Below are positions 11,626 to 50,051 of a stretch of 64,000 nucleotides of DNA, in pieces. Source of the DNA: Marsupella aquatica (lineage: Eukaryota > Plantae > Marchantiophyta); NCBI GenBank assembly GCA_973895155.1, contig OZ316898.1, positions 13,732,330-13,796,329 of the forward strand, given 5' to 3'. Positions within the stretch are counted from its first letter, which is position 1, and each line of letters starts with the position of its first letter. The notes beneath the pieces were generated by a model. It made no database searches. It had not been told where the DNA came from and was given only the letters and a program-made list of their open reading frames with translations. The position numbers and the translations under genes were made by a program.

Positions 11626-11811
11626 CCACTTGTACCGTGATTTTGGTTCAGAGCTCCGACGCACAAGACGAGTCATTCTGTCTTCGTTCTTCGTCTTCTT
11701 TACGAGTTGGGCTTCCGGTGGGAGCTCTGAATTGAGGAGACCGCGGTGTGGTGTGGTGTGGTGTGGTGTGGTGGGGATCGTGTGCTGCGTAAATAATAAT
11801 TGGGTGGGTGA

Positions 11812-13263
<1,452 letters not shown>

Positions 13264-15421
13264 GGAGTGCAGGTCCACCATGTAGAGCCTAAAGGAGAAC
13301 TTCGGGTCATTATAGAGATTTGAAGATTGAAGGATTCATGTCTGAAGCGAGGCTCGTAGTCAGGACCTAGAGACTGTCTCCTCATACGTGCTCCACAAAG
13401 CTTTGTGGATACTTTCGACGGTTTCGTTGTACCACTATTCCCACCCATGTAAATATTCGGAAATAATCAGTTTGTTCATAGATACAGAGGACTGTCTCAC
13501 TATTGCATGATAAATTCGATTTGGTTTACTTCTAGTTCGTCACATTCCACCTCGTGCATGCTAAAATTATGGGCATAAATGAACCAAGTGGAGGCAGTTG
13601 GGTTGAGCATAGAAACTTGCAGTATTATTCTTTCATTCGTAACTGTCCGTGGGTCTTAAGGATGGAGGGATGAGAGTTGAAATTTTCTCAACTTTGAAGA
13701 TGTCATTTCCGTCTGAACCACCTCTTGTATGTAATTTTGAACATCAAACTGTGGGGGATCGTTAGCCAGAGAGATGTCCTTCAGTGTAGCTATGGTCATG
13801 TAAGCCTCAGGAGTATATGGTGTATTATTGCGTCAAAGTAACACCCTGTTTGCTTCCTTTTTTTTTGTTGGTCAAATTCGGGGACATCGACTGATCTTAG
13901 GTAGGAGCAGACTCAAACGTGACAACGGTCGCCACTGTGTATAGAATTGTCTTGAGTGCACAGTTACAGTGAGATGAGACCATCGCTCTTACAATCTTTT
14001 CTGTGGTCCGAATTACAAATTGAAACAGTCTGAGCCACTGTGATGTGTCGACACCAGTGTAAGAGTCAGAGTGCAACGTCTCTCTTTTACAATCGTCACT
14101 GGTCCCACTTACAAATCGTTAGCAAACTGAAGGGAAATGAACAGGAAGCTAAAGTCGAGAGTAAAGGTACGGTGGACTTTCACAAGAGAAACGTCTTAAA
14201 CTTCGAACAGTATACAGCAGTGAAGTAGTTCACGAACCTATCGTTTTCAAACTTGTAACATCACATCGTTATTGTGGTCTCATCAACCACAACTACTTTC
14301 GTCTTCCGGTACACTGGTACAGGAGTTCCTCGTGCTGACGTAAATCTCTGATGGGCTGGCAGGAGGCATTTGTACATCTTTCGTGCAGGTGAAGTTGGAG
14401 AGAGTGGGGATCCGTGAAAACCTGTTTACAATTCCAGATTTCGCAGATCTTGAAATCTCTTCAAACTAACACGTGATGGTGTTTTTCTTTCTTTGACTCA
14501 AAGACCCAGTGGCCAACACCTTTATGTCTTCACCTACACCTTAGCCAGAGACAATAAGTACTGCAGAATGGAACCAAGCCAGGAAGGTCATGTCTATTTT
14601 GGGGATTTTCATTCAGCAGGCCAATTGTAGGTTGTTTTGCCCAGAATGACTTGGAAGGACCTCAGCAAAACTACTGCCGGTATTGAATCTGAATGGCCTT
14701 GATCGCTACTTGAACGAGGGATCATCCACAAAAGTAGATCTCAAGCATGTGCCAAGAGTGCACAGCCTCAACTCCTCCGACTGAGGGGTAAGGTGATGGC
14801 ACGGTGGTCAATGTGCTCTTGTTGTAAGTCGCACCAGATGATCCATGTCCTTTGCCCCACGCCCATGCTTAACGAAGCAGTGCTGTAAAATTTGCCAGAT
14901 CAGGATGCAAGTTTAGAGAGGATGACAGGCACCAAATGAAGTTGGGTGTTCTTGAATTCCACATTTCCGATTGACACAAGAATTCTCCATGCACCCTGAG
15001 ATGAGCATTTTGAACCAAATTTGATCCCGCTCCCTCACGATTGTCTTTCAACCGATTTAAAGAAACTCCAGAGCAAAGATGCAGACAACCAGTCGGACAC
15101 ACTGGACATTGCCGATTGAGTTCGCTAAGTGGGTGCATTAATGTCCTCGAGACTTTTAAGGGTTACCACGAGGGTCTCAAGGTAATGCCAATATGAATTA
15201 CCCACTTATGATTGTATGCACAACTCTAGACAAAATTTTAGATACTTTCTGTGAATCTTAGAAAACAAATTGCAATGCATACCTTAGTAATATTCTTAGA
15301 CCTTAGTAATTAAAAACAAGCTGAATTCTACAGGGTTTTCATAGGTTTTTGCGATTTGCTGAAACGTGAAAACATTGAGCTTTTGTGCAGGTCCTGTGCG
15401 GGGCTACGGAAAATGTATAAG

Positions 15422-15568
15422 GTAATCACGGTCTTGTCGACCATTACCGGGGAGTAATAGGCACGACGCGGTTCTGACACAGGCACGACCGGCTGGAGCC
15501 GGGAGTGCCTGGGGAGGAACTGGGGAGGGCCGGTTCTCCCGGCAACGGACGAACAAGATCGTGATTAC
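15422..15568. mobile_element. 147-bp non-autonomous mini-element (or terminal hairpin module) with ~33-bp inverted ends related to the adjacent Crypton-like element
   Basis: Left end gtaatcacggtcttg-tcgaccattaccggggag versus reverse complement of right end gtaatcacgatcttgttcgtccgttgccggg-ag. Confidence 0.7.
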
Positions 15569-15819
15569 GTTACGTAATCAAGGGTAGGTCGTGCGGTTAC
15601 CGGTTGCTCTCGGTTAGACGACCGAGATTAAATCCATCAAACCTGGTCGCGATGGGGGTAAAGCGAGGCAACAGCGGATGGGTGCTCATACTATTGTTAG
15701 GGTAGGCTGCACTGTGAATGTCGATGCGCTGTGGAATGTTTTTGAGCGGGGATGGCGGCGAGTTGTTGGTGCAGATGGAGGCTAGTTGCTGCTGCAGGAA
15801 TGGAGGCCAGTTGCTGCGA

Positions 15820-16020
15820 GGAGCGGGGAATGGAGATGAGGCATTGTTTTGAAGTTTCTGTTGCTGTTATTGTGGCGTTGTGCAATGTCGATGGCTTGCA
15901 ATGTCACTGCGGGAATAGCCGATGTTCTTTGGAGCGGGGAATGGAGATCGTGACATTCTTTTTGAAATTTGTATTGCTGTTATTGTGGCGCTGTGCAATG
16001 TCGATGGCTTGCAATGTCGA
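15820..16020. repeat. ~111-bp tandem duplication inside the Crypton-like 5' region
   Basis: ggagcggggaatggagat...ttgctgttattgtggcg.tgtgcaatgtcgatggcttgcaatgtc occurs twice. Confidence 0.8.
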
Positions 16021-16052
16021 TGTGTTTGATGTGAATAACTGCTGGTGCGATA

Positions 16053-18136
16053 TTGGTTAAAATGACGATGTGTGTGGACAGTTTAGTTTCATTCTCGTCG
16101 ATTACTGAATCTGTGGAATCGGTGGTGCAGGGATACAGGAAGATGGAGGAGTTGGTTGACGATGGAGCTGCAACCGAGTGGACTGCTGGTGACATTGATT
16201 ACTGTTCCTTGGACGAGCTTCATGGCGAGCAATCGACTGAAGTTGATGAGATTGACTTACGCACTGTGTTTGATGAAATCTCTTGAGACTCTGTGGCTGT
16301 CGATGTCGTTTCTACTCTGTTCGAGAGTGAGTCTGTCCAGCAGTTAGAGGTAAGTGTGCCAGGGTTACGGGCGCTTCCCGACCCTATGCTAGCTTAGGCA
16401 GGTAGAGGCGAAGAGAAATCAGCTTCACACAACAACGATCGATGGGCAGCAAAATGAGCTGACAGTCTTCGAATGGGTCTTGGTTGGGACATGACGGTTC
16501 CTCTTGGGAGTTTGCCTTTGCAACAGCTTGATGAGCTGTTTAGTAATCTTTTTACAAGAGCTGTAAAAGTAGACGGTACTCCATATCCTTCAGCCACTCT
16601 CATGAACATGATGAATGGCTTTAATCGAATCTTGAGGCATGCAAGCGACATTAGATCATTGAGATGTGAGGGAAATCTGCTAGAGAAAGATTTTAATATC
16701 AATGCGCATCCAGCTTTTGCTAGAACTCGCATGGTCCTGAACGCTGCCATCAAGAAGAGTGCAAAGGATGGAGTAAACAAAAAAAGAAAGAAGGTATGCA
16801 GCTTGCTTTCGAAATAGTTTCTGTTTTCAGTGGAAGTTGTTGTTTGTGCATCTTTAACAGCCTTTCGAATGGTACAGGGTGAAGTCTTAACAGAGCAGAT
16901 GGAGACGGCAATCTTAGCAGACATTGACCATCAGCTGACCTATAGCCACGGATGTCAGAAGCGCTTGGCGTTCTTTTGTCTTGTCAGGTTGGGTTTGAGA
17001 GGAGGAGGGGAAATATGGAACTTGCATCGCAATGATCTGAAAACCTGTCTGGACAAAGCAGGCAGAGAGTATGTCATGTAAGTATCCTTTTGAATCACTA
17101 ACTTAACAAGTTTTTTCTTTCTGTGATCCCTGACTGCTCATATTATGTGGTTTTCGTGTTCAGGTTTGAAGAGAGGGAGAGCAAAAACAACTCGTACACA
17201 CTTCAGAAGTACCAAGAGGAGCAGTTTCGCAATGTCTTCCATAGTTACGATGAAGACTTCTTGATGACGGTGAAGCAGTACAAGCGGCATTTGCCACCTG
17301 AAGCAGAGTCCGAGAAGCCTGACTTGTTCATGCAGGCTGTCACAAATCCAGCAGGGATTGTTTGGTACAACAAATGTCACAAGGTTGGGAGAGATACAGC
17401 TGGTAAGTGGCTAAAAAATATGGCTCTACTAGTAGGATTGACACCTGAAGTATTCACCAATCGCAGTGGGAGAGCTACTCTCATCACCCGAATGGCTGCT
17501 CGTGGAGTTCCTGATGAAGTTGGTATGCTAATCAGTGGACACCATTCCACTGGGGGCTATTTGAGGTATGATCGAACATAGAGATTGAAGATGGAAGCAG
17601 CTACATTAGTGTCTAGCAATCCTGCTATGGATACGAGAAAGCCTTGTCACATGTATCAGAGAAATTTGTTGCAGAGGAGCTGGTCGGATCTTGTTCTGGT
17701 TTGAAGCTGCTTGTAAGCAGGGTGAGCGAGAACTCTAATCTGCCGATGGCCATTACGAATCTCTTGCAGGTAAGTCGATGCAGTACTTTCTGGTTTCTTG
17801 TGACTTGTTTACTGTAATCTCATTTTACTTATTCCTGCTATGAATTGGCAGGTCCGAGAGGAACAACATATGGAGGAGAAAGGTCCTACAAATAGTTCGG
17901 ATGGTTCAAACAGCAAGAGGTCGAGATGGGAGAGAAATTATGACGACTTTGACTGGGAGAATGCAATTCTGACCAAGGATCCAGAGCTGTTTAAGAGAAT
18001 GTCATCGCTACCGAAGTCACCACGTTCAGTAGGAAGTAATATGTCAGGGAATGCTTTCCATAATTGTAGTGTGACCATCAAGTTTGTTCATCCGAACAAT
18101 GAGGAAGACAAGGAGAATAGTGTAGGTCCAAGCTAA
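16053..18136 (+). pseudogene. Tyrosine recombinase (Crypton / DUF3504-like), spliced and disrupted
   Basis: Introns at 16794-16877, 17078-17163 and 17770-17851 (all GT-AG), possibly also 16350-16400. Motifs: DGTPYPSATL, AFARTRMVL, GLRGG (R), ERESKNN (K), VWY..HKVG, TNRSGR, SGHHS and YLRY (Tyr at His+9), with C-terminal FHNCSVTI. In-frame stops at 16284, 16395, 16455 and 17579, and an apparent 1-nt deletion near 17631. Confidence 0.88.
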
Positions 18137-18638
18137 TGGTGTAGATAGTGATAAGTCTCCATTGTTGAGACAGAGTTCTCATGTAGTCAGGCTAGTTATA
18201 CAATTGCTTATATAGAATTATCCGGTAAGTGTTCTACTGATTATACATTTATCATGAACCTGAAGTATTCTTTTGTCACGTCATTTGGATTGATCAGTAT
18301 TTTTGTCACCTTTCAATAAAACAGAATGATTTTTGTACATGAAACTGTTTGAGTCTTTTGTGACCAAATTGTGTATACACTTTCCGTCTGGATTGTCACA
18401 AGAAATCACTATCAGCCATGACACAGAAATAAAACCTGCCAAGAAACACAAGCCGAGTGTCGCCCCCACTGGAAACCAGAACAGACGATGCTCCTATTGA
18501 GAAAACAGAAAAGAAGAAAAAGGATTGGAATAGCCATGATCAAGAGTAAACTGGCAACTGAGAAATGTATGTTCTCCGTTGAAAAATATGCCTTGTCCAT
18601 CCACTCCTTATCCCTTTTCCATCCACTCCTTATAGGAC

Positions 18639-18701
18639 TCCGTAAGGGCATTATGAATTTCCGTCAAAGCATTACAGGGTTCCGTAAAGGAATTATGGAT
18701 T
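18639..18701. repeat. Three 21-bp subterminal tandem repeats near the right end of the Crypton-like element
   Basis: tccgtaagggcattatgaatt / tccgtcaaagcattacagggt / tccgtaaaggaattatggatt at 18639, 18660 and 18681. Confidence 0.7.
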
Positions 18702-20133
18702 TTTGTTGTGTCAGGATGGAATATTATGGTAATGGGCATAATGGACGGAAAGTTTCACCCAACGGTAACCGCACCACCAACCCGTGATTACGAGATTGCA
18801 AGTGTACTGCAGAATTGATCATGATTGTGATAAGTCCAAATTGAGTGGCCACCATGCTGATGTCAGTCACATTTGGAGGTCAGGAGCTTGCACTTCATTA
18901 GGGAGTCTCAAAGCCAGGCCATGGCTGAAAGTTACCAGTTTATGGTCCATCCTGTAACTCTAGTTATAGGACCCATTTAAGGATTTTCAAAAATGGGGGG
19001 AAGTAGCATTGACAGTCCCATAATGCATGGCTTTACACCCCGGCAACTTTCCATCGCTTCTTTAGAATGATGCGGGGTACATTATCTAGAGTGGACCTTA
19101 TCTCCCGGTGTCTGTCATCATGACCTTCTTTTAGACTGAGGGAGTCTGACGTGCTCTAGAGGGCTCACACATTAATTTCACAATTCTTTGTAGAGTGAGA
19201 CTGTTGGGTTTAGGGCATTTGATCAAATTCCCTTGCTTAACCCTCCCATGCAGCTCACCTTAAATCTCTACCAGGCTCTTCAGCTTGACGTCAGAGAGGT
19301 TTCAGGTATTTTTGTTCCTAGGTGCTTTGGTGGACTTTTGTCCGGGTCCCCTGGGCCTTTTGGTTTCTTTTGTTGCATTCCCTTGATTCAGTCATTTGCC
19401 TGTGGGATAATTTTTTCAGGTTGGGTGCCTTCAGTTTTTTGCAGTTTAATATTATTTTTATGGCGTCACCTTAGACTAATGACATATACTGTTTCTCCGT
19501 CATCCTTAGACACCATCCCAAATGCAGCAGCCACTAGTGCCTGGAAACACCGCGCAACAATGCAAATGTCCACTGCTTTTTGCGCAGCATTTGCAAATTT
19601 TTGTAGTGAGTGACAGGGTAGAACAAACTTATTGAAGGGGCACACCTGGTTGGTTCTAAACATCATAGTTTCGCTCTTTTTCAAGTATTTTGCGATTGGA
19701 GGAAAAAAATTTGAAAACAACCTTGCTTCATATTTGGTATAACTTCTAATGTGTTCTTTGCATCATTCCTGAAAAAAACTCATTTGCATAAAGAGTGGAC
19801 ATGTATGATCGTCAACAAAACTTGCTTAGTTTTGAAAATGCATCCATTTTTGGGAGTGAAGGTGGCGGGAGGAGGGCTATGAGATGGAACCCAGAGAGGT
19901 ATGGGTTGGAGACTAGAGGGCTATGGGATGAAGGGGGGAGGTGGGAGAAACTATGCGCTAGAGACCAGAGGGCTATGGGGTGGAAGCCAAAAAGCTATGG
20001 GATAGAGGCCGGAGAGACCATCCTAGACAAGCCCATCATGCCTAGAGCTGAGAACTAGACAGCAAAAAGACAGCAGTAGTGTGGAGAGGACCCCTATTGT
20101 AAGACTCAAGCTGCTCCAAAAACATTGGAAGCT

Positions 20134-20755: not shown

Positions 20756-21609
20756 ATGTCACCGTCCATGAGGGTTTCCCGGTTCGCTGGCTGGGAATTC
20801 CATGGTTCACAGGCTGGACAATCGGGGTGTCAACTTCCATTTCTTGAAACTATTCTGTAGCACAGTATATAAAAGTAGTAGTGTGATGAAATCAAACGAG
20901 GACGTTGCAAATCTTGAGACAAAATGTTCGTCAATCTTTGAAAAATCCGATCTATCTGTACTGTCCATACACAAAGGCAACGGCTCTCACGTTTCAGTCT
21001 AGTTCTAGTTAGATCAGCCAGTGCCCCCGAATTTGACAAAAGCAAATGAAGCAAACATGGCAATGTTCGATGCAAACGTACGGAGATACTCCTGATGCTC
21101 AGATGACCATTGCTACGACTCGAGGACAACAGCTGGCTACTGAACCCCAACAATTTGAGGTACTTCAGACGGAAGTAACGTCTTCAAAGCTACGAGAAAT
21201 TCAGCGCTCATGCCCCATATAGCAGTAAGGATGAAAGAACAGTTCTGCAAGATTCTATGCTGAACCTCACATTCCAGATCTTCGAACAAGGCCAGTCAAA
21301 TCATATATGCATTCGATATTTGCATCTGAGCAGTGCACTGAATGACGAAGTAGAGGGAAACCAGATCAATTTCTCTCGCAATAGTGAAGTAGTCCACTGT
21401 ACTAGTGAACGAAACTGATTCTTCGGAATATTTACATCAGTGGGAAGAGTGGTACATGTAAAACGTCGACGTATCCACAAAGCTTATGGAGCACTATACG
21501 AGGAGATACTCTCCGGGTCCTAACTACAATACCAGCCTCGCTTTAAACAATGGATCCTTGAATCTCTGCGCTACAACCTCGGCTCTACAGTGGTCGACCT
21601 GCAGTGTCC

Positions 21610-22977
<1,368 letters not shown>

Positions 22978-23404: not shown

Positions 23405-23611
23405 CCTCTCTATGGTCAGTCAGATATTGAGGGCCTCAATAAGCTCAAAGGCAATAGGGCGTGTCAAAGCAGGCCTCTCTATGGTAGTCAGATATTGAGG
23501 GCCTCAATAAGCTCAAAGGCAATAGGGCGTGTCAAAGCAGGCCTCTCTATGGTAGTCAGATATTGAGGACCTCAATAAGTGCAAAGGCAATAGGGCCTGT
23601 CAAAGCAGGCC
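23405..23611. repeat. 68-bp tandem repeat x3 with an internal palindrome
   Basis: Unit cctctctatggtagtcagaTATTGAGGgCCTCAATAagctcaaaggcaatagggcgtgtcaaagcagg at 23405, 23474 and 23542. Confidence 0.92.
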
Positions 23612-23707
23612 TGAACTGTTACAAATCAGGACAAAAATACATAGAAGTAAGACTATGCTTACAGGAGAATTTTGCCAAAAATACACAGAAGTAAAACTAT
23701 ACTTAAG

Positions 23708-24731
23708 GGGAAATTTTGACCCTGAGTTAAATCTACATCAAGTTAATGCTCCCCCACTTTCCTGGGGCGCCGTACACTGCCCGTCCCAATCCCCGATGCT
23801 GCTGCCCGCTCCGGCCCAAGTTTGGCAGAACATAAACCAATACTCTAAGATTTAACGCATGCGCTCCGGCCTAATCGACTTTGCGCCATCGACTGCGGGT
23901 TTATGTTTTGGCACATTCGCTCACTCCAGCCCGAATGACTTAAGTTTGTGTCATCGACTTCTTCCTTGTGGAGTCGTGGTTTATGTTCTGGCAACTCTTC
24001 TTTCCAACAGAGTTATATTTTCTTTGTAAGAGAGTCTAAGTGTTCAAGGCAAGCCTAGTACTTTGGTTAAGAGTTCCGATTTATAGAGTCTTGGTTTATG
24101 TTGTGCCAAATACTTATCCTCTATGGACTTGTGATTAATGTTTTGGCAACACTTCTTTCCAAGGGAGTGATGTTTGTTTAGTAAGACAATCTAAGCATTT
24201 AGGCACAACCTAGTATTTGGGTTAAGAGTCATGATTCTAGAGTCTTGGTTGATGTTTTTCCAAATGCTTCTTCTTGATGGAGTCATGGTTTATGTTCTGG
24301 CAACACTTCTTTCCGATGGAGTCATACCTATTTTGTAATAGAATCTAAGTGTTCAAGGGGAGCCTAATACTTTGGTTGAGAGTCATGATTGTTAGACTCT
24401 TGGTTTATGTTATGCCAAGTACTTATTCTCTATGGAGTTGTGGTTTATGTCTTGGCAACACTTATTTCCAAAAAGTTGATGACACAAAGTAGACCGGGCT
24501 GGAGCGGCCGACAAAAAGTGATGGGTGCCAAAACATAAACCCGAAGTCGATGGCGCAAAGTCGATCGGACCAGAACACATGCGTTAAATCGTAGAGTATT
24601 GGTTTATGTTCTGCCAAACTTGGGCTGGAGCGGGCAGCAGCATCGGGGATTGGGATGGGCAGTGTACGGCGCCCCTGCAAAGTGGGGGAGCATTAACTTG
24701 ATGTAGATTTAACTCAGGGTGAAAATTTGCC
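23708..24731. mobile_element. Non-autonomous foldback/MULE-like element with ~250-bp TIRs and internal ~155-bp tandem repeats
   Basis: aaatttt.accctgagttaaatctacatcaagttaatgctcccccacttt... at 23711 mirrors ...aaagtgggggagcattaacttgatgtagatttaactcagggtgaaaattt at the right end. The interior repeats gagtc.tggtttatgtt. No TSD was recognised. Confidence 0.88.
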
Positions 24732-47362: not shown

Positions 47363-48506
47363 CTAGTCCTGCCTTATAGTACTGGTAGCAGCAGCAGGAG
47401 CAGCAACTCTTTTGGCGAGGTTGAGATGAGTGTTGACGAGAAGGTGAATCTGAGCTTTGCGAAGGTGACGACGATTTAGAGGGAGAGCTTTAGGGCACGT
47501 CAGCAGAAATTTGGTCGGATGTCGGGGCGAGCGCGAGGTACGTACTTGTTGCGACTCCATCGATTTGCGGTTTCTGTAATGTCCTGGTTGTAATTTTATC
47601 GCGCCTGGCAGACTACTGTCCGATTGTGCGTCCATTGTTCCATTTTGAATAATTCTGGCGATGGTTTGATAGGAATTCCACATTCTAGTCTGTTCTTCTA
47701 TCCTGTATTGCTAGAATTATCCAGAGATGTACCATCAGATGTGTTTGAGTGGCCATTGCCAACGTCGAAACACACCCGTTTTGTTTTGCGCCGTAGACTC
47801 TCCACTGTTGCCCGCCCTCGATCTATCCAACGCATAAGTTGCCGGCCCGTCTTAGTTTGAACTGACCAGGGAACGACTTTCGAAACTATGGATGCTTCAT
47901 TTCTCATTGTTTTACAGAACCAAACCATGTAGGTCTGTAAACGCTTCAATTATATCACTGTCTCGTTTCTCATTGCCTTAGTCAATGGAACGTTGAGGGC
48001 TTTCGGCGTCTTAAAACCCAGCTGCTTTGTAACTGAAATCGCGTTGACATGCCATCACCTTATTGCGGACTCCCAACACGGTATTGTTCACGATGAATGA
48101 AGTGAATTATATCTCGTGCTAAAACACGCTCCATGTTGTTTTTCCTTGCCAACATATAAACAACCCGCCCAAATTCTAAGGCTGATCTAGGATCTTTATA
48201 CACCCCTTCAAAATTGGTAGGTGGTCAGCTCATGCTAGCTCCGGGCATGTAAAGAGAGTCATCCCAGCAGTTTCCATGCTAAAGCCTGATGTAGCTTTTG
48301 TTGTATGCACCGCTGAATGTTTGTCAGTATACTGTGTTTGGAAGAGGGTTCTTCTTATCTGTCTTGTAAAGGCGAGGTTTGCAGCTTCTTTTGCTATCGA
48401 ATGTTGAAATGATATGTACCCGCAAATACATGTTGTTTCATACCAGCTAAGGTTTCTGGCTTATTTTGCAGAAGTGCTGTCTCTCAGCCGCATTTGCCTG
48501 CGTAAA

Positions 48507-50051
48507 ATGCGGTCTACAGGGACACCACCCCCACTTCACTCTGTTCCATTCCGGCTTTACTCTGTTCGACTGCAGCAGCTACCATGTTCTACAATTGATC
48601 GTTACACACTGGTCACTTTCGTGCAGCTTGTGGGACCGAAGAAAATACAGCTGTTAGACGTCGAGCCTTCGCTCTTCAATGCTGTGAGACGTCATCCTCT
48701 AAAGTGCAAATTTTCTGGACAAACTAGAGCCTATGCCTTGCTTTCCCACAGTTCATACCAAACTTCGGCTCCTTCCTTGGAGAAGGAAGACTCTCAATTC
48801 GAGACAGATGGACGCCAGGAACTTAAGCAAGCCTTGGCTGAGTTCATGGAACTTACTCTTAAAGTTAGCAAGCAACTTGCTATCGATATCTCGGAAAATT
48901 CCCCGGCCTTTGTTGATGGACTTGTAGAAAAATTGGAGGTGTCACAGGTGGATTATTCCTCTACTGTGAACAAGAGCCTCAATACAGCCGTCAAGGAGCT
49001 ATTGGTCAAGTCCAAATTTAAGGGAGTTGAGCCCTTCTTGGAGAGCTTAGGCGTCAAGCCCGAAAATATTAAGAAGGTCAGTGATTACGCACGATCTGGG
49101 ATTAAGGGAATCTTGGTCAAAGTTGACCTACTCAAGGCCATAGGAGTTAAGCCTGAAGAGATTCCTACAGTAATATCCACGAATCCAAGGTTTCTCAGTA
49201 ATGCACTAGTAACCAATCAAGTCAAGGTTGAGTATCTGGCGCAGCTGGGTATGTCTCCTGTAGAAATCTGCAAGCTTATCAATCAATATCCAAATTCATT
49301 GAGTTTTGGCCTAAAGGATGGTGGTCTTCCCCTGGTAAAGTTTTTAAAAAATATCGGTGTTAACGATGAAGACATATGCAAAGTTTTAATCCGCTCTCCA
49401 CAGCTGCTTACGCTCAACGTGGAAAGAAAGTTGCTACCTGCAATTGAAAGCCTGGAAAGTGTTGGTATCACAGGGAGCTATTTGGCAAGGGTCGTGGTCA
49501 TGCAACCCTCATTGCTCAGACGTAGACTCGAAAGGAATATAGCATTCTGTCGAGAGTTTGGATTAGATTCAAAACCTGGGGTCATAGCAAGGTTGCTTGT
49601 AACCTGCCCGAATTTCAGTGTGGATGGATGCGCAGCTCGAGTGAGCTATCTTGAAAGCGTTGGCCTAACAAAGGAGCAGATAGTGAGTATGATTAACAAA
49701 AATCCTGCCTTCTTGAGCTTGAATGTAAAAACCTCGCTGGCTCCAAAGATAAATTACCTCATGAATGTGATGGGACGACGAGTCGACCAGCTTATCACAG
49801 CATCCACCTTCCTTACTATGAGCTTAGAACACAGAATCAAACCTCGACATGAGGTCCTTGGTGCGTTGAAAGAAGCTGGTTTACTGAAGCGAGATTACAG
49901 TCTCTCAAGTATGGGTTCGTGGAGTGACGATTACTTCTTCAAAAAATTTGTGGAGAAAAGTCCACCACATATTATGGATTTATGGAACGGCCAATCAGTT
50001 AGAAGTGCACCTCTGGTAGACGGTGAGACGTCCCATCCACCAGCTTTGTGA
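48507..50051 (+). CDS. mTERF-family protein (organelle-targeted), single coding exon
   Basis: Repeated ~35-aa units L..IGV....I..VI...P..L and a C-terminal MSLEHRIKPRH...F..KFV. The ATG at 48507 follows an acceptor-like ttttgcag (~48471). The N-terminus is Ser/Arg-rich, like a transit peptide. Confidence 0.92.
   Translation: MRSTGTPPPLHSVPFRLYSVRLQQLPCSTIDRYTLVTFVQLVGPKKIQLLDVEPSLFNAVRRHPLKCKFSGQTRAYALLSHSSYQTSAPSLEKEDSQFETDGRQELKQALAEFMELTLKVSKQLAIDISENSPAFVDGLVEKLEVSQVDYSSTVNKSLNTAVKELLVKSKFKGVEPFLESLGVKPENIKKVSDYARSGIKGILVKVDLLKAIGVKPEEIPTVISTNPRFLSNALVTNQVKVEYLAQLGMSPVEICKLINQYPNSLSFGLKDGGLPLVKFLKNIGVNDEDICKVLIRSPQLLTLNVERKLLPAIESLESVGITGSYLARVVVMQPSLLRRRLERNIAFCREFGLDSKPGVIARLLVTCPNFSVDGCAARVSYLESVGLTKEQIVSMINKNPAFLSLNVKTSLAPKINYLMNVMGRRVDQLITASTFLTMSLEHRIKPRHEVLGALKEAGLLKRDYSLSSMGSWSDDYFFKKFVEKSPPHIMDLWNGQSVRSAPLVDGETSHPPAL

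What the first reader, a model, noticed from the sequence alone, without database searches (positions are those of the whole stretch)
15573..18792. Crypton-like tyrosine-recombinase transposon with intact boundaries in a land-plant genome
Seen: a spliced gene whose exons join into a YR fold protein (GLRGG, ESKNN, TNRSGR, SGHHS, YLRY with Tyr nine residues after His, C-terminal FHNCSVTI). It is enclosed by 30-bp inverted repeats that are 27/30 identical and has 21-bp subterminal repeats. No RT or DDE transposase is present. Established: YR-only, intron-containing DNA transposons are Cryptons; DUF3504-type YRs typify animal CryptonA and domesticated genes such as KCTD1, ZMYM and QRICH1. Cryptons are known mainly from fungi, animals and stramenopiles. 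Inference: this is a full-length copy of a little-described land-plant Crypton lineage, and both its ends can be defined.
Basis: partly seen in the sequence, partly recalled or inferred. Interest (0 to 1): 0.9.

Follow-up and report, generated by a model that had tools for sequence, protein, structure and literature searches.

The report
Dead liverwort Crypton-like recombinase transposon
This is a dead copy of a mobile DNA element that moves with a cut-and-rejoin (tyrosine recombinase) enzyme, from a family found in liverworts, mosses and ferns, whose conserved end design (a palindrome plus inverted repeats) I could not find described for any such element.

Summary
The 27/30 inverted repeat, the 21-22-nt subterminal repeats, the recombinase motifs and the spliced but broken gene are all present.

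The protein belongs to a land-plant sister clade of the DUF3504/CryptonA tyrosine recombinases (profile-profile E 4e-44). A full-length Calypogeia fissa relative models as a two-domain Cre-like fold. No RT or DDE gene is present.

The left end, however, is not 15573. Contigs with an empty site from the same organism, and two C. fissa paralogs, show that the mobile unit is about 15422-18791. The unit has four copies of one terminal arm (GTAATCACGG...) and no target-site duplication.

The same layout (palindrome, left inverted repeat, recombinase gene, right inverted repeat) recurs in C. fissa, in the moss Ceratodon purpureus and in a plant contig from a metagenome. Described Cryptons have no terminal inverted repeats, so this is a new variant of a known kind.

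This copy is dead, with four in-frame stops and one frameshift.

The scan has already met this family elsewhere in the same genome (s1-765044, s1-778898, s1-772899). I found no paper describing Cryptons in land plants. Repbase could not be checked.

The parts
15422..18791 (+). Whole mobile unit (3370 bp, +/-1 because one G is shared at both junctions; possibly up to 8 nt more on the left)
   Evidence: Empty-site contigs in runs X1 and X3 join about 15399 to 18792 and lack everything between (table 5c). Two X4 contigs diverge exactly at 18792 (table 7). C. fissa paralogs L001 and L005 share homology from the palindrome start to the right inverted-repeat end.
15414..15421 (+). Left-flank motif TGTATAAG, a candidate preferred target or microhomology
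   Evidence: TGTAT(W)(W)G-like motifs abut the palindrome in the window, C. fissa, L003 and L004. The empty sites read TGTAAATG and GGTAAATG at this spot.
15422..15568 (.). Palindromic module P; its outer arms start with GTAATCACGG / GTAATCACGA
   Evidence: It is 72% complementary to itself over 158 nt. It folds as a single long hairpin, -47.8 kcal/mol, z -6.3. An equivalent palindrome lies at the same position in L001, L005, L003, L004 and L006.
15559..15583 (.). Internal junction: right arm of P, a 5-nt spacer (15569-15573), then the left inverted repeat. It looks like a complete recombinase core site.
   Evidence: Read directly from the sequence and from the arm matches. Comparable junctions occur in L001, L004 and L006.
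15574..15602 (+).
15750..16018 (+). Tandem repeats in the 5' region: 23 nt x2.8, and a 111-113-nt duplication
16062..16793 (+). Exon 1 (acidic N-terminal region and N-terminal DNA-binding-type domain). It carries in-frame stops at 16284-16286, 16395-16397 and 16455-16457.
   Evidence: tblastn of C. fissa P0150 against the window; ORF ends
16878..17077 (+). Exon 2 (contains the LRGGGE motif, the first catalytic Arg)
   Evidence: GT/AG sites read
17164..17769 (+). Exon 3 (SKNN Lys, NRSGR, GHH, RY nucleophile). It has a stop at 17579-17581 and a frameshift between 17630 and 17643.
17852..18136 (+). Exon 4 (C-terminal tail with the conserved NCxVxI motif; stop at 18134-18136)
18587..18701 (+). Subterminal repeats: 22 nt x2 at 18587-18633 and 21-nt units at 18639-18701
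18763..18791 (-). Right terminal inverted repeat, ending in the outermost 10-nt arm at 18782-18791

Best explanation
Window 15422-18791 is a decayed, structurally complete copy of a DNA transposon that is mobilised by its own tyrosine recombinase. The family is a land-plant sister clade of CryptonA/DUF3504 recombinases, found in liverworts, a moss and ferns.

Shown:
- The element encodes only a Cre-fold recombinase.
- It carries four copies of a ~30-nt arm (GTAATCA[C/A]G...TTACCGG), arranged as a ~150-bp palindromic module followed directly by a left inverted repeat, with the matching right inverted repeat at the far end.
- It sits as a discrete insertion without target-site duplication, next to a TGTAWWWG-like motif.
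- It is multi-copy in its genome.
- This layout is conserved between liverwort and moss elements.

Inferred:
- The arms are recombinase-binding sites.
- The element leaves and enters the chromosome by conservative site-specific recombination, probably through a double-stranded circle in which the right end joins the left end. That junction would be a palindromic core site like the one already present inside the element, between the palindrome and the left inverted repeat.
- The palindrome serves as a second core or accessory site, or as a cruciform or hairpin substrate.

This particular copy cannot make the enzyme (four stops, one frameshift). At most it could be moved in trans.
For: Protein:
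- phmmer of exon 3 finds 146 relatives, including full-length C. fissa, Adiantum and Ceratodon proteins.
- Of 37 long hits, 19 carry Phage_integrase and 16 carry DUF3504.
- hhalign of the plant clade against the DUF3504 clade gives probability 100%, E 4.3e-44, over 338 columns.
- The AlphaFold model of P0150 has pLDDT above 90 over about residues 211-580.
- Its best PDB matches are Cre-loxP complexes (TM 0.6, ~340 columns), then XerH, Tn1549 integrase and QRICH1.

Ends:
- Empty-site contigs (table 5c).
- Contigs that diverge at 18792 (table 7).
- Paralog homology limits in C. fissa.
- Four GTAATCACGG arms, against about 2 chance matches per 64 kb.

Conserved layout: L001/L005, L006 Ceratodon, L004, and the palindrome in L003.

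Multi-copy: 261-288 contigs at 80-100% identity were laid on the stretch in X1 and X3.

No TSD: junction sequences.
Against: - No activity has been observed, and no RNA run holds the sequence.
- The plant clade replaces the His of the HxxR box by Lys or Arg in every member, so catalysis is unproven.
- The role of the palindrome, the circular intermediate and the target motif all rest on inference from a handful of copies.
- The empty sites are diverged (paralogous or homeologous) rather than strictly allelic, so the exact left junction is uncertain by up to 8 nt.
- One related copy (L003) shows the palindrome but no detectable right inverted repeat.
Confidence: 0.75

Rival explanations
1. The recombinase gene is passive cargo inside a non-autonomous terminal-inverted-repeat element that is moved in trans by a DDE transposase encoded elsewhere (a Pack-MULE or MarCry-like situation).
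For: The element has terminal inverted repeats and subterminal repeats, features typical of DDE transposons. A Mariner-Crypton composite, MarCry-1_FO, is known (PMC3212892).
Against: No target-site duplication appears at any of four junction pairs. The inverted repeats and the palindrome diverge in step with the recombinase lineage across liverwort, moss and the metagenome plant, which is expected if the encoded enzyme uses them. No DDE gene lies in any element.
Confidence: 0.08
2. It is a remnant or derivative of a DIRS/Ngaro-type retroelement that has lost its RT/RNase H. The palindrome-plus-repeat arrangement would then be a relic of split or inverted repeats with an internal complementary region.
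For: The internal junction (palindrome arm plus left inverted repeat) duplicates what an end-to-end circle junction would look like. This is the logic of the DIRS internal complementary region and of Ngaro split repeats (PMC13465315 background). Another note of this scan reads a related copy as A...B-A-B (s1-772899, unchecked).
Against: The empty sites show that the complete inserted unit has no RT. The full-length C. fissa, Ceratodon and metagenome elements are also RT-free. Introns are retained, and one intron position is shared by moss and liverwort copies, which argues against an RNA intermediate. The protein groups with CryptonA-type proteins.
Confidence: 0.07
3. It is a decayed paralog of a domesticated host gene of the DUF3504 type, not a mobile element, and the inverted repeats are incidental.
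For: Many DUF3504 genes in animals are domesticated (PMC3212892). One relative (P0148, 843 aa) is intact and was seen with the same neighbours in 12 metagenome contigs.
Against: There is insertion polymorphism with precise ends. The family has many diverged copies, with C>T and G>A changes dominating. Paralogs lie in unrelated flanks. The candidate catalytic residues are retained, unlike in the domesticated animal genes.
Confidence: 0.05

Closest known systems
CryptonA elements and their DUF3504 derivatives (animals; Kojima & Jurka 2011, PMC3212892)
   Same: Both encode only a tyrosine recombinase with the same three-part layout: an N-terminal QRICH1-type domain, DUF3504 and a catalytic C-terminus. 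The two groups are homologous over 338 columns. Both even share a C-terminal Cys-x-x-N-x tail motif. Introns are present in both.
   Different: Animal Cryptons showed no terminal repeats of any kind in 50 copies (PMC3212892). This family has terminal inverted repeats plus a palindromic module. The plant clade is a separate, well-supported branch (98/91). It falls below Pfam thresholds. It has Lys or Arg in place of the HxxR His.
Glomhopper (CryptonA subfamily of Glomeromycota; PMC13465315)
   Same: Both are transposon-borne DUF3504-type recombinases that keep their catalytic residues, and both occur as intron-containing and intronless variants (compare the intronless P0016/P0148).
   Different: Glomhoppers are fungal. 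[quoted passage not shown]
CryptonF-1_cRei of Chlamydomonas reinhardtii (PMC9977147)
   Same: It is a YR-only DNA transposon in the green lineage. It inserts site-specifically next to a short motif (CAYCG) and excises cleanly. This matches the absence of a TSD and the candidate TGTAWWWG preference here.
   Different: It belongs to the CryptonF clade. Its end is defined by a 5-nt terminal motif shared with the target, with no terminal inverted repeats or palindrome reported. That element is demonstrably active; the one here is not.
Bacterial integrase-type mobile elements (lambda, Tn916/Tn1549) and Cre-lox
   Same: The fold is the same. The ends carry inverted recombinase-binding arms, so that joining the ends makes a palindromic core site. 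Subterminal repeats could act as arm-type sites. Insertion leaves no TSD.
   Different: This element is eukaryotic and spliced, the sequence relationship is distant, and no accessory excisionase is evident.
DIRS and Ngaro retroelements; Starships
   Same: All are YR-mobilised eukaryotic elements with structured terminal repeats. DIRS elements have inverted terminal repeats and an internal region that mimics the joined ends. Some Starships have terminal inverted repeats.
   Different: There is no RT/RNase H here, the element is small (3.4 kb), and the recombinase belongs to a different clade (Starships use DUF3435).

Membership tests
Tyrosine recombinase superfamily | Two-domain Cre/integrase fold | tested here: met
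   The AlphaFold model of the full-length homologue P0150 matches Cre over ~340 columns, TM 0.6, probability 1.0. This was tested on the homologue, not on the broken window copy.
Tyrosine recombinase superfamily | Catalytic R-K-H-R-H/W-Y set | tested here: inconclusive
   Arg (LRGG), Lys (SKN), Arg (SGR), His (GH) and Tyr (RY) are conserved in the plant clade. The His of HxxR is Lys or Arg in all members; it aligns to the XerA His. From my own knowledge, type IB topoisomerases carry Lys at this position, so activity is plausible but untested.
DUF3504 / CryptonA protein clade | Significant match to PF12012 (with PF25561 and PF00589 around it) | tested here: inconclusive
   The window exons give no hit. 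The best plant homologue, P0008, scores 24 bits against a cutoff of 29.7. However, profile-profile comparison with bona fide DUF3504 proteins gives E 4.3e-44, and phmmer from exon 3 reaches them directly.
Crypton (as defined by Goodwin 2003 and Kojima & Jurka 2011) | Encodes a YR and no RT, DDE or other transposase | tested here: met
Crypton | No terminal inverted repeats or long direct repeats | tested here: not met
   It has a perfect 10-nt outermost inverted repeat and ~30-nt arms, plus a ~150-bp palindrome, and these are conserved in four lineages.
Crypton | Short (4-6 bp) direct repeats at both termini, shared with the target | tested here: not met
   Only a single G is shared at the two junctions in the window. 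No consistent direct repeat is seen in C. fissa or Ceratodon. A one-sided target-like motif, TGTAWWWG, is seen instead.
DIRS / Ngaro | RT/RNase H linked to the YR | tested here: not met
   There is no RT inside the unit delimited by the empty sites or in the related elements.
DDE-type TIR transposon | Target-site duplication of fixed length | tested here: not met

The most novel reading that the evidence does not exclude
Bryophytes and ferns harbour an old, so far undescribed superfamily-level lineage of tyrosine-recombinase DNA transposons. It would be the first YR mobile elements documented in land plants. Its terminal design duplicates the joined-ends core site inside the element (palindromic module plus inverted repeats), so a DNA-only element would use the kind of end redundancy otherwise known from DIRS/Ngaro retroelements. 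Its catalytic set would be topoisomerase-IB-like (R-K-K/R-R-H-Y).
Probability: 0.45. Interest if true: 0.78.

Novelty: new variant of a known kind. Interest (0 to 1): 0.62.

Why it matters
A 2022 review of land-plant transposable elements lists no tyrosine-recombinase elements: DIRS is said to occur only in green algae, and Cryptons are not mentioned (PMC9033089). The 2026 survey of DUF3504 elements places them in Opisthokonta (PMC13465315). A family with definable ends, empty sites and intact members in liverwort, moss and fern genomes would fill that gap.

Crypton ends have always been hard to define. This family offers clear candidate binding sites (arms, core-like junction, palindrome) that could be tested directly with an intact recombinase.

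It also matters for annotating bryophyte and fern genomes, where these copies are currently called 'unnamed' or 'hypothetical' proteins.

Tried and rejected
- Pfam on the window's exons, searched one by one, gave no family hit.
- PDB sequence search with exon 3 alone and with the plant-only profile gave nothing significant. Only the mixed profile reached QRICH1 and Xer/integrases.
- Two scans of metagenome contigs, with alignment A2 and with P0016, returned no confirmed locus.
- DNA for the Adiantum loci could not be fetched because the files were too large, so the end design is untested in ferns.
- The search for homologous proteins with P0009 found only one further C. fissa paralog.
- The 12 contigs carrying P0148 appear to be one locus seen in many samples, so they gave no paralog boundaries.
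- A PIF/Harbinger-type TTA duplication and other TSDs were looked for at the junctions and rejected.
- Chance origin of the inverted repeat was rejected.
- A large inverted duplication of the flanks as the source of the repeat was rejected. Only the two polyubiquitin genes are duplicated.
Exons were handled separately by reference, and the full-length analyses used the natural homologue P0150.
- Repbase and Dfam could not be consulted.
Full report
**What is in the sequence**

By my estimate it is far beyond chance for a 4.5-kb stretch.

Between the arms lies one gene on the + strand. Its frames carry the quoted motifs LGLRGGGE, ESKNN, TNRSGR, SGHHS, YLRY and FHNCSVTI. I aligned the full-length Calypogeia fissa homologue P0150 (711 aa) to the window with tblastn and read the splice sites. 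This gives four exons:
- 16062-16793
- 16878-17077
- 17164-17769
- 17852-18136

The copy is broken by in-frame stops at 16284, 16395, 16455 and 17579, and by one frameshift near 17630-17643.

The subterminal repeats exist: 22 nt x2 at 18587-18633, and 21-nt units at 18639-18701. No other sizeable ORF and no RT or DDE domain is present.

They were searched separately by reference, and analyses that needed a whole protein used natural homologues.

**What the protein is**

Pfam finds nothing on the separate exons. A phmmer search of exon 3 (138 aa) against 1.84 billion representatives gives 146 hits.
- The nearest named hits are 'unnamed' or 'hypothetical' proteins of the liverwort C. fissa, the ferns Adiantum capillus-veneris and A. 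nelumboides, and the moss Ceratodon purpureus.
- The weaker hits are bona fide QRICH1-domain + DUF3504 + Phage_integrase proteins.

A profile of 11 plant proteins aligns to a profile of 12 DUF3504 proteins with probability 100%, E 4.3e-44, over 338 columns. The aligned region runs from the N-terminal domain to the catalytic tyrosine.

In a tree of the exon-3 region, a 36-row clade that holds all the named plant proteins is separated from the DUF3504 clade by a 98/91 branch. The window copy sits with C. fissa P0150 in a 99/94 subclade.

The AlphaFold model of P0150 is confident over about residues 211-580. Its best PDB matches are Cre-loxP complexes (TM about 0.6 on the target, ~340 columns), then XerH, Tn1549 integrase and QRICH1.

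The candidate catalytic Arg, Lys, Arg, His and Tyr are conserved. The His of the HxxR box is Lys or Arg in every plant member. From my own knowledge, that is the residue type IB topoisomerases carry at this position.

**Where the element really ends**

- It is 72% self-complementary.
- As single-stranded DNA it folds into one hairpin, z -6.3.
- Its two outer arms begin with the same 10-mer as the two long repeats. GTAATCACGG, allowing one mismatch, occurs at 15422 (+), 15559-15568 (-), 15574 (+) and 18782-18791 (-).

Three lines of evidence show that this module belongs to the mobile unit.

First, two C. fissa paralogs (L001 and L005, in unrelated flanks) are homologous from the first base of their own palindrome to the last base of their right repeat, and not beyond.

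Second, contigs of runs X1 and X3 (the organism of the window) join window position ~15399 directly to 18792, with a few diverged flank letters between. These are empty sites that lack both the palindrome and the gene (table 5c).

Third, two contigs of run X4 follow the element up to 18792 and then continue into unrelated sequence (table 7).

The unit is therefore 15422-18791, give or take the one G shared by both junctions. The outermost inverted repeats are a perfect 10 nt, and there is no target-site duplication. The left end at 15573 is an internal repeat.

**A conserved design**

The same order (palindromic module, a few bases, left inverted repeat, recombinase gene, right inverted repeat) is found in several loci:
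- C. fissa: 35-37-nt repeats, 89-91% complementary, with a 154-bp palindrome.
- The moss Ceratodon purpureus: palindrome arms 35 nt at 97%, repeats 26 nt at 85%.
- A plant contig from a metagenome that carries an intronless 819/843-aa gene: a 124-bp palindrome, and repeats found by eye and by seed matches.
- A second, more distant C. fissa lineage (L003): it has the palindrome, but I found no right repeat.

The arm sequences differ between lineages except for a GTAAY core at the outer end. Each palindrome has stayed a palindrome, and each repeat pair has stayed a pair.

One intron position, before the ...FEER/SKN exon, is shared by the moss and liverwort genes.

The bases just left of the palindrome resemble TGTAT(W)(W)G in four lineages. 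The two empty sites read TGTAAATG and GGTAAATG at that spot. This suggests a preferred target or microhomology.

In L001 a 428-bp element with family-like ends abuts the palindrome with one base between. That is what one would expect if element ends are themselves favoured targets.

**How it most likely works**

The established facts are a Cre-fold enzyme, four inverted arms, precise insertion without duplication, many diverged copies in the genome, and a layout conserved since at least the moss-liverwort split (or spread by horizontal transfer).

The rest is inference:
- The arms are recombinase-binding elements.
- The junction between the palindrome's right arm and the left repeat (two inverted arms around a 5-nt spacer, 15559-15583) is a complete core site.
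- Joining the two outer ends in an excised circle would create an equivalent site.
- Integration is conservative recombination beside a TGTAWWWG-like sequence.
- The subterminal repeats could be accessory binding sites.

What the palindrome adds is open. It could be a second core site, a cruciform or hairpin substrate, or a promoter.

This copy is dead and could only be moved in trans.

**Rivals**

- Cargo of a DDE transposon. This is unlikely, because there is no TSD and the ends have diverged in step with the recombinase.
- An RT-less DIRS/Ngaro derivative. This is unlikely because the complete unit has no RT, introns are retained and the protein has CryptonA affinity. The end redundancy is, however, reminiscent of those elements.
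- A decayed domesticated gene. This is unlikely because of the insertion polymorphism, the copy number and the retained catalytic residues.

**Comparison and novelty**

At the protein level this is a divergent sister of CryptonA/DUF3504. By definition, though, Cryptons lack terminal inverted repeats and carry short terminal direct repeats, and animal Cryptons showed no terminal repeats at all (PMC3212892; restated in PMC13465315). Neither feature holds here, so I file it as a new variant of a known kind, not simply as a Crypton.

In the searchable literature I found no Crypton or other YR element described from land plants:
- A 2022 review of land-plant TEs lists none (PMC9033089).
- The 2026 DUF3504 survey speaks of Opisthokonta (PMC13465315).
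- Searches pairing Crypton with liverwort, Marchantia, Physcomitr- or fern gave nothing relevant.

Repbase and Dfam could not be checked, and automated 'DNA/Crypton' labels may exist.

The scan itself has met this family elsewhere in the same genome. For s1-765044, the follow-up also concluded that the ends follow an undescribed conserved design. The other notes are s1-778898 and s1-772899, and the mini-element note s1-775370 on this window. I treated these as leads only.

**Host**

The mTERF gene of the window is 80% identical to its C. fissa counterpart and 56% to Riccia. The genome is therefore that of a leafy liverwort near Calypogeia, but not C. fissa itself.

Noticed in passing
window 11653-13945 (+) and 20964-22973 (-): Two polyubiquitin genes (6 and 5 ubiquitin units; ORFs 11833-13260 and 21613-22926) lie tail to tail as an 82-85% identical inverted duplication. 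The element sits in the 7-kb spacer between them.
   Followed up: partly
window 48414-50048 (+): An intact mTERF-family gene is 80% identical to a Calypogeia fissa protein and 56% to Riccia. This places the genome among leafy liverworts near Calypogeia.
   Followed up: partly
L001 5051-5478: A 428-bp element with 20-nt inverted ends of the family type (ACGTAATC...) lies one base from the palindrome of the C. fissa copy and is absent from the paralog L005. It is a candidate non-autonomous relative inserted at an element end.
   Followed up: partly
L001 6937-7939: The C. fissa copy that encodes P0009 has about 1 kb of extra DNA inside the gene relative to its paralog L005, and its annotated protein skips part of the catalytic exon. 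The gene model is of a damaged copy.
   Followed up: no
L004 / L007-L015 (metagenome plant contigs): An intact, intronless 843-aa family member was seen with identical sequence in 12 contigs from different samples, next to a Ty1/copia fragment and an LTP gene. It is a candidate active or domesticated copy.
   Followed up: partly
L006 10811, 10842 and 10998: In the Ceratodon element the terminal GGTTACG motif recurs twice within about 190 nt of the right end. These are subterminal copies of the arm core and possible accessory binding sites.
   Followed up: no
window 14900-19300 as laid on runs X1, X3, X4: Differences between the window copy and its paralogous contigs are dominated by C>T and G>A changes, the pattern expected for methylated, silenced repeats (table 1).
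   Followed up: no
proteins P0079 and P0070 (hits): Two hits combine a recombinase fragment with RVT_1 or with PPR repeats. They are probably chimeric gene models across neighbouring insertions rather than real fusions.
   Followed up: no
window 23405-23612 and 23708-24731: There is a ~70-nt tandem repeat (93-96% identical) and an adjacent ~260-nt inverted repeat pair (86%), both unrelated to the element.
   Followed up: no
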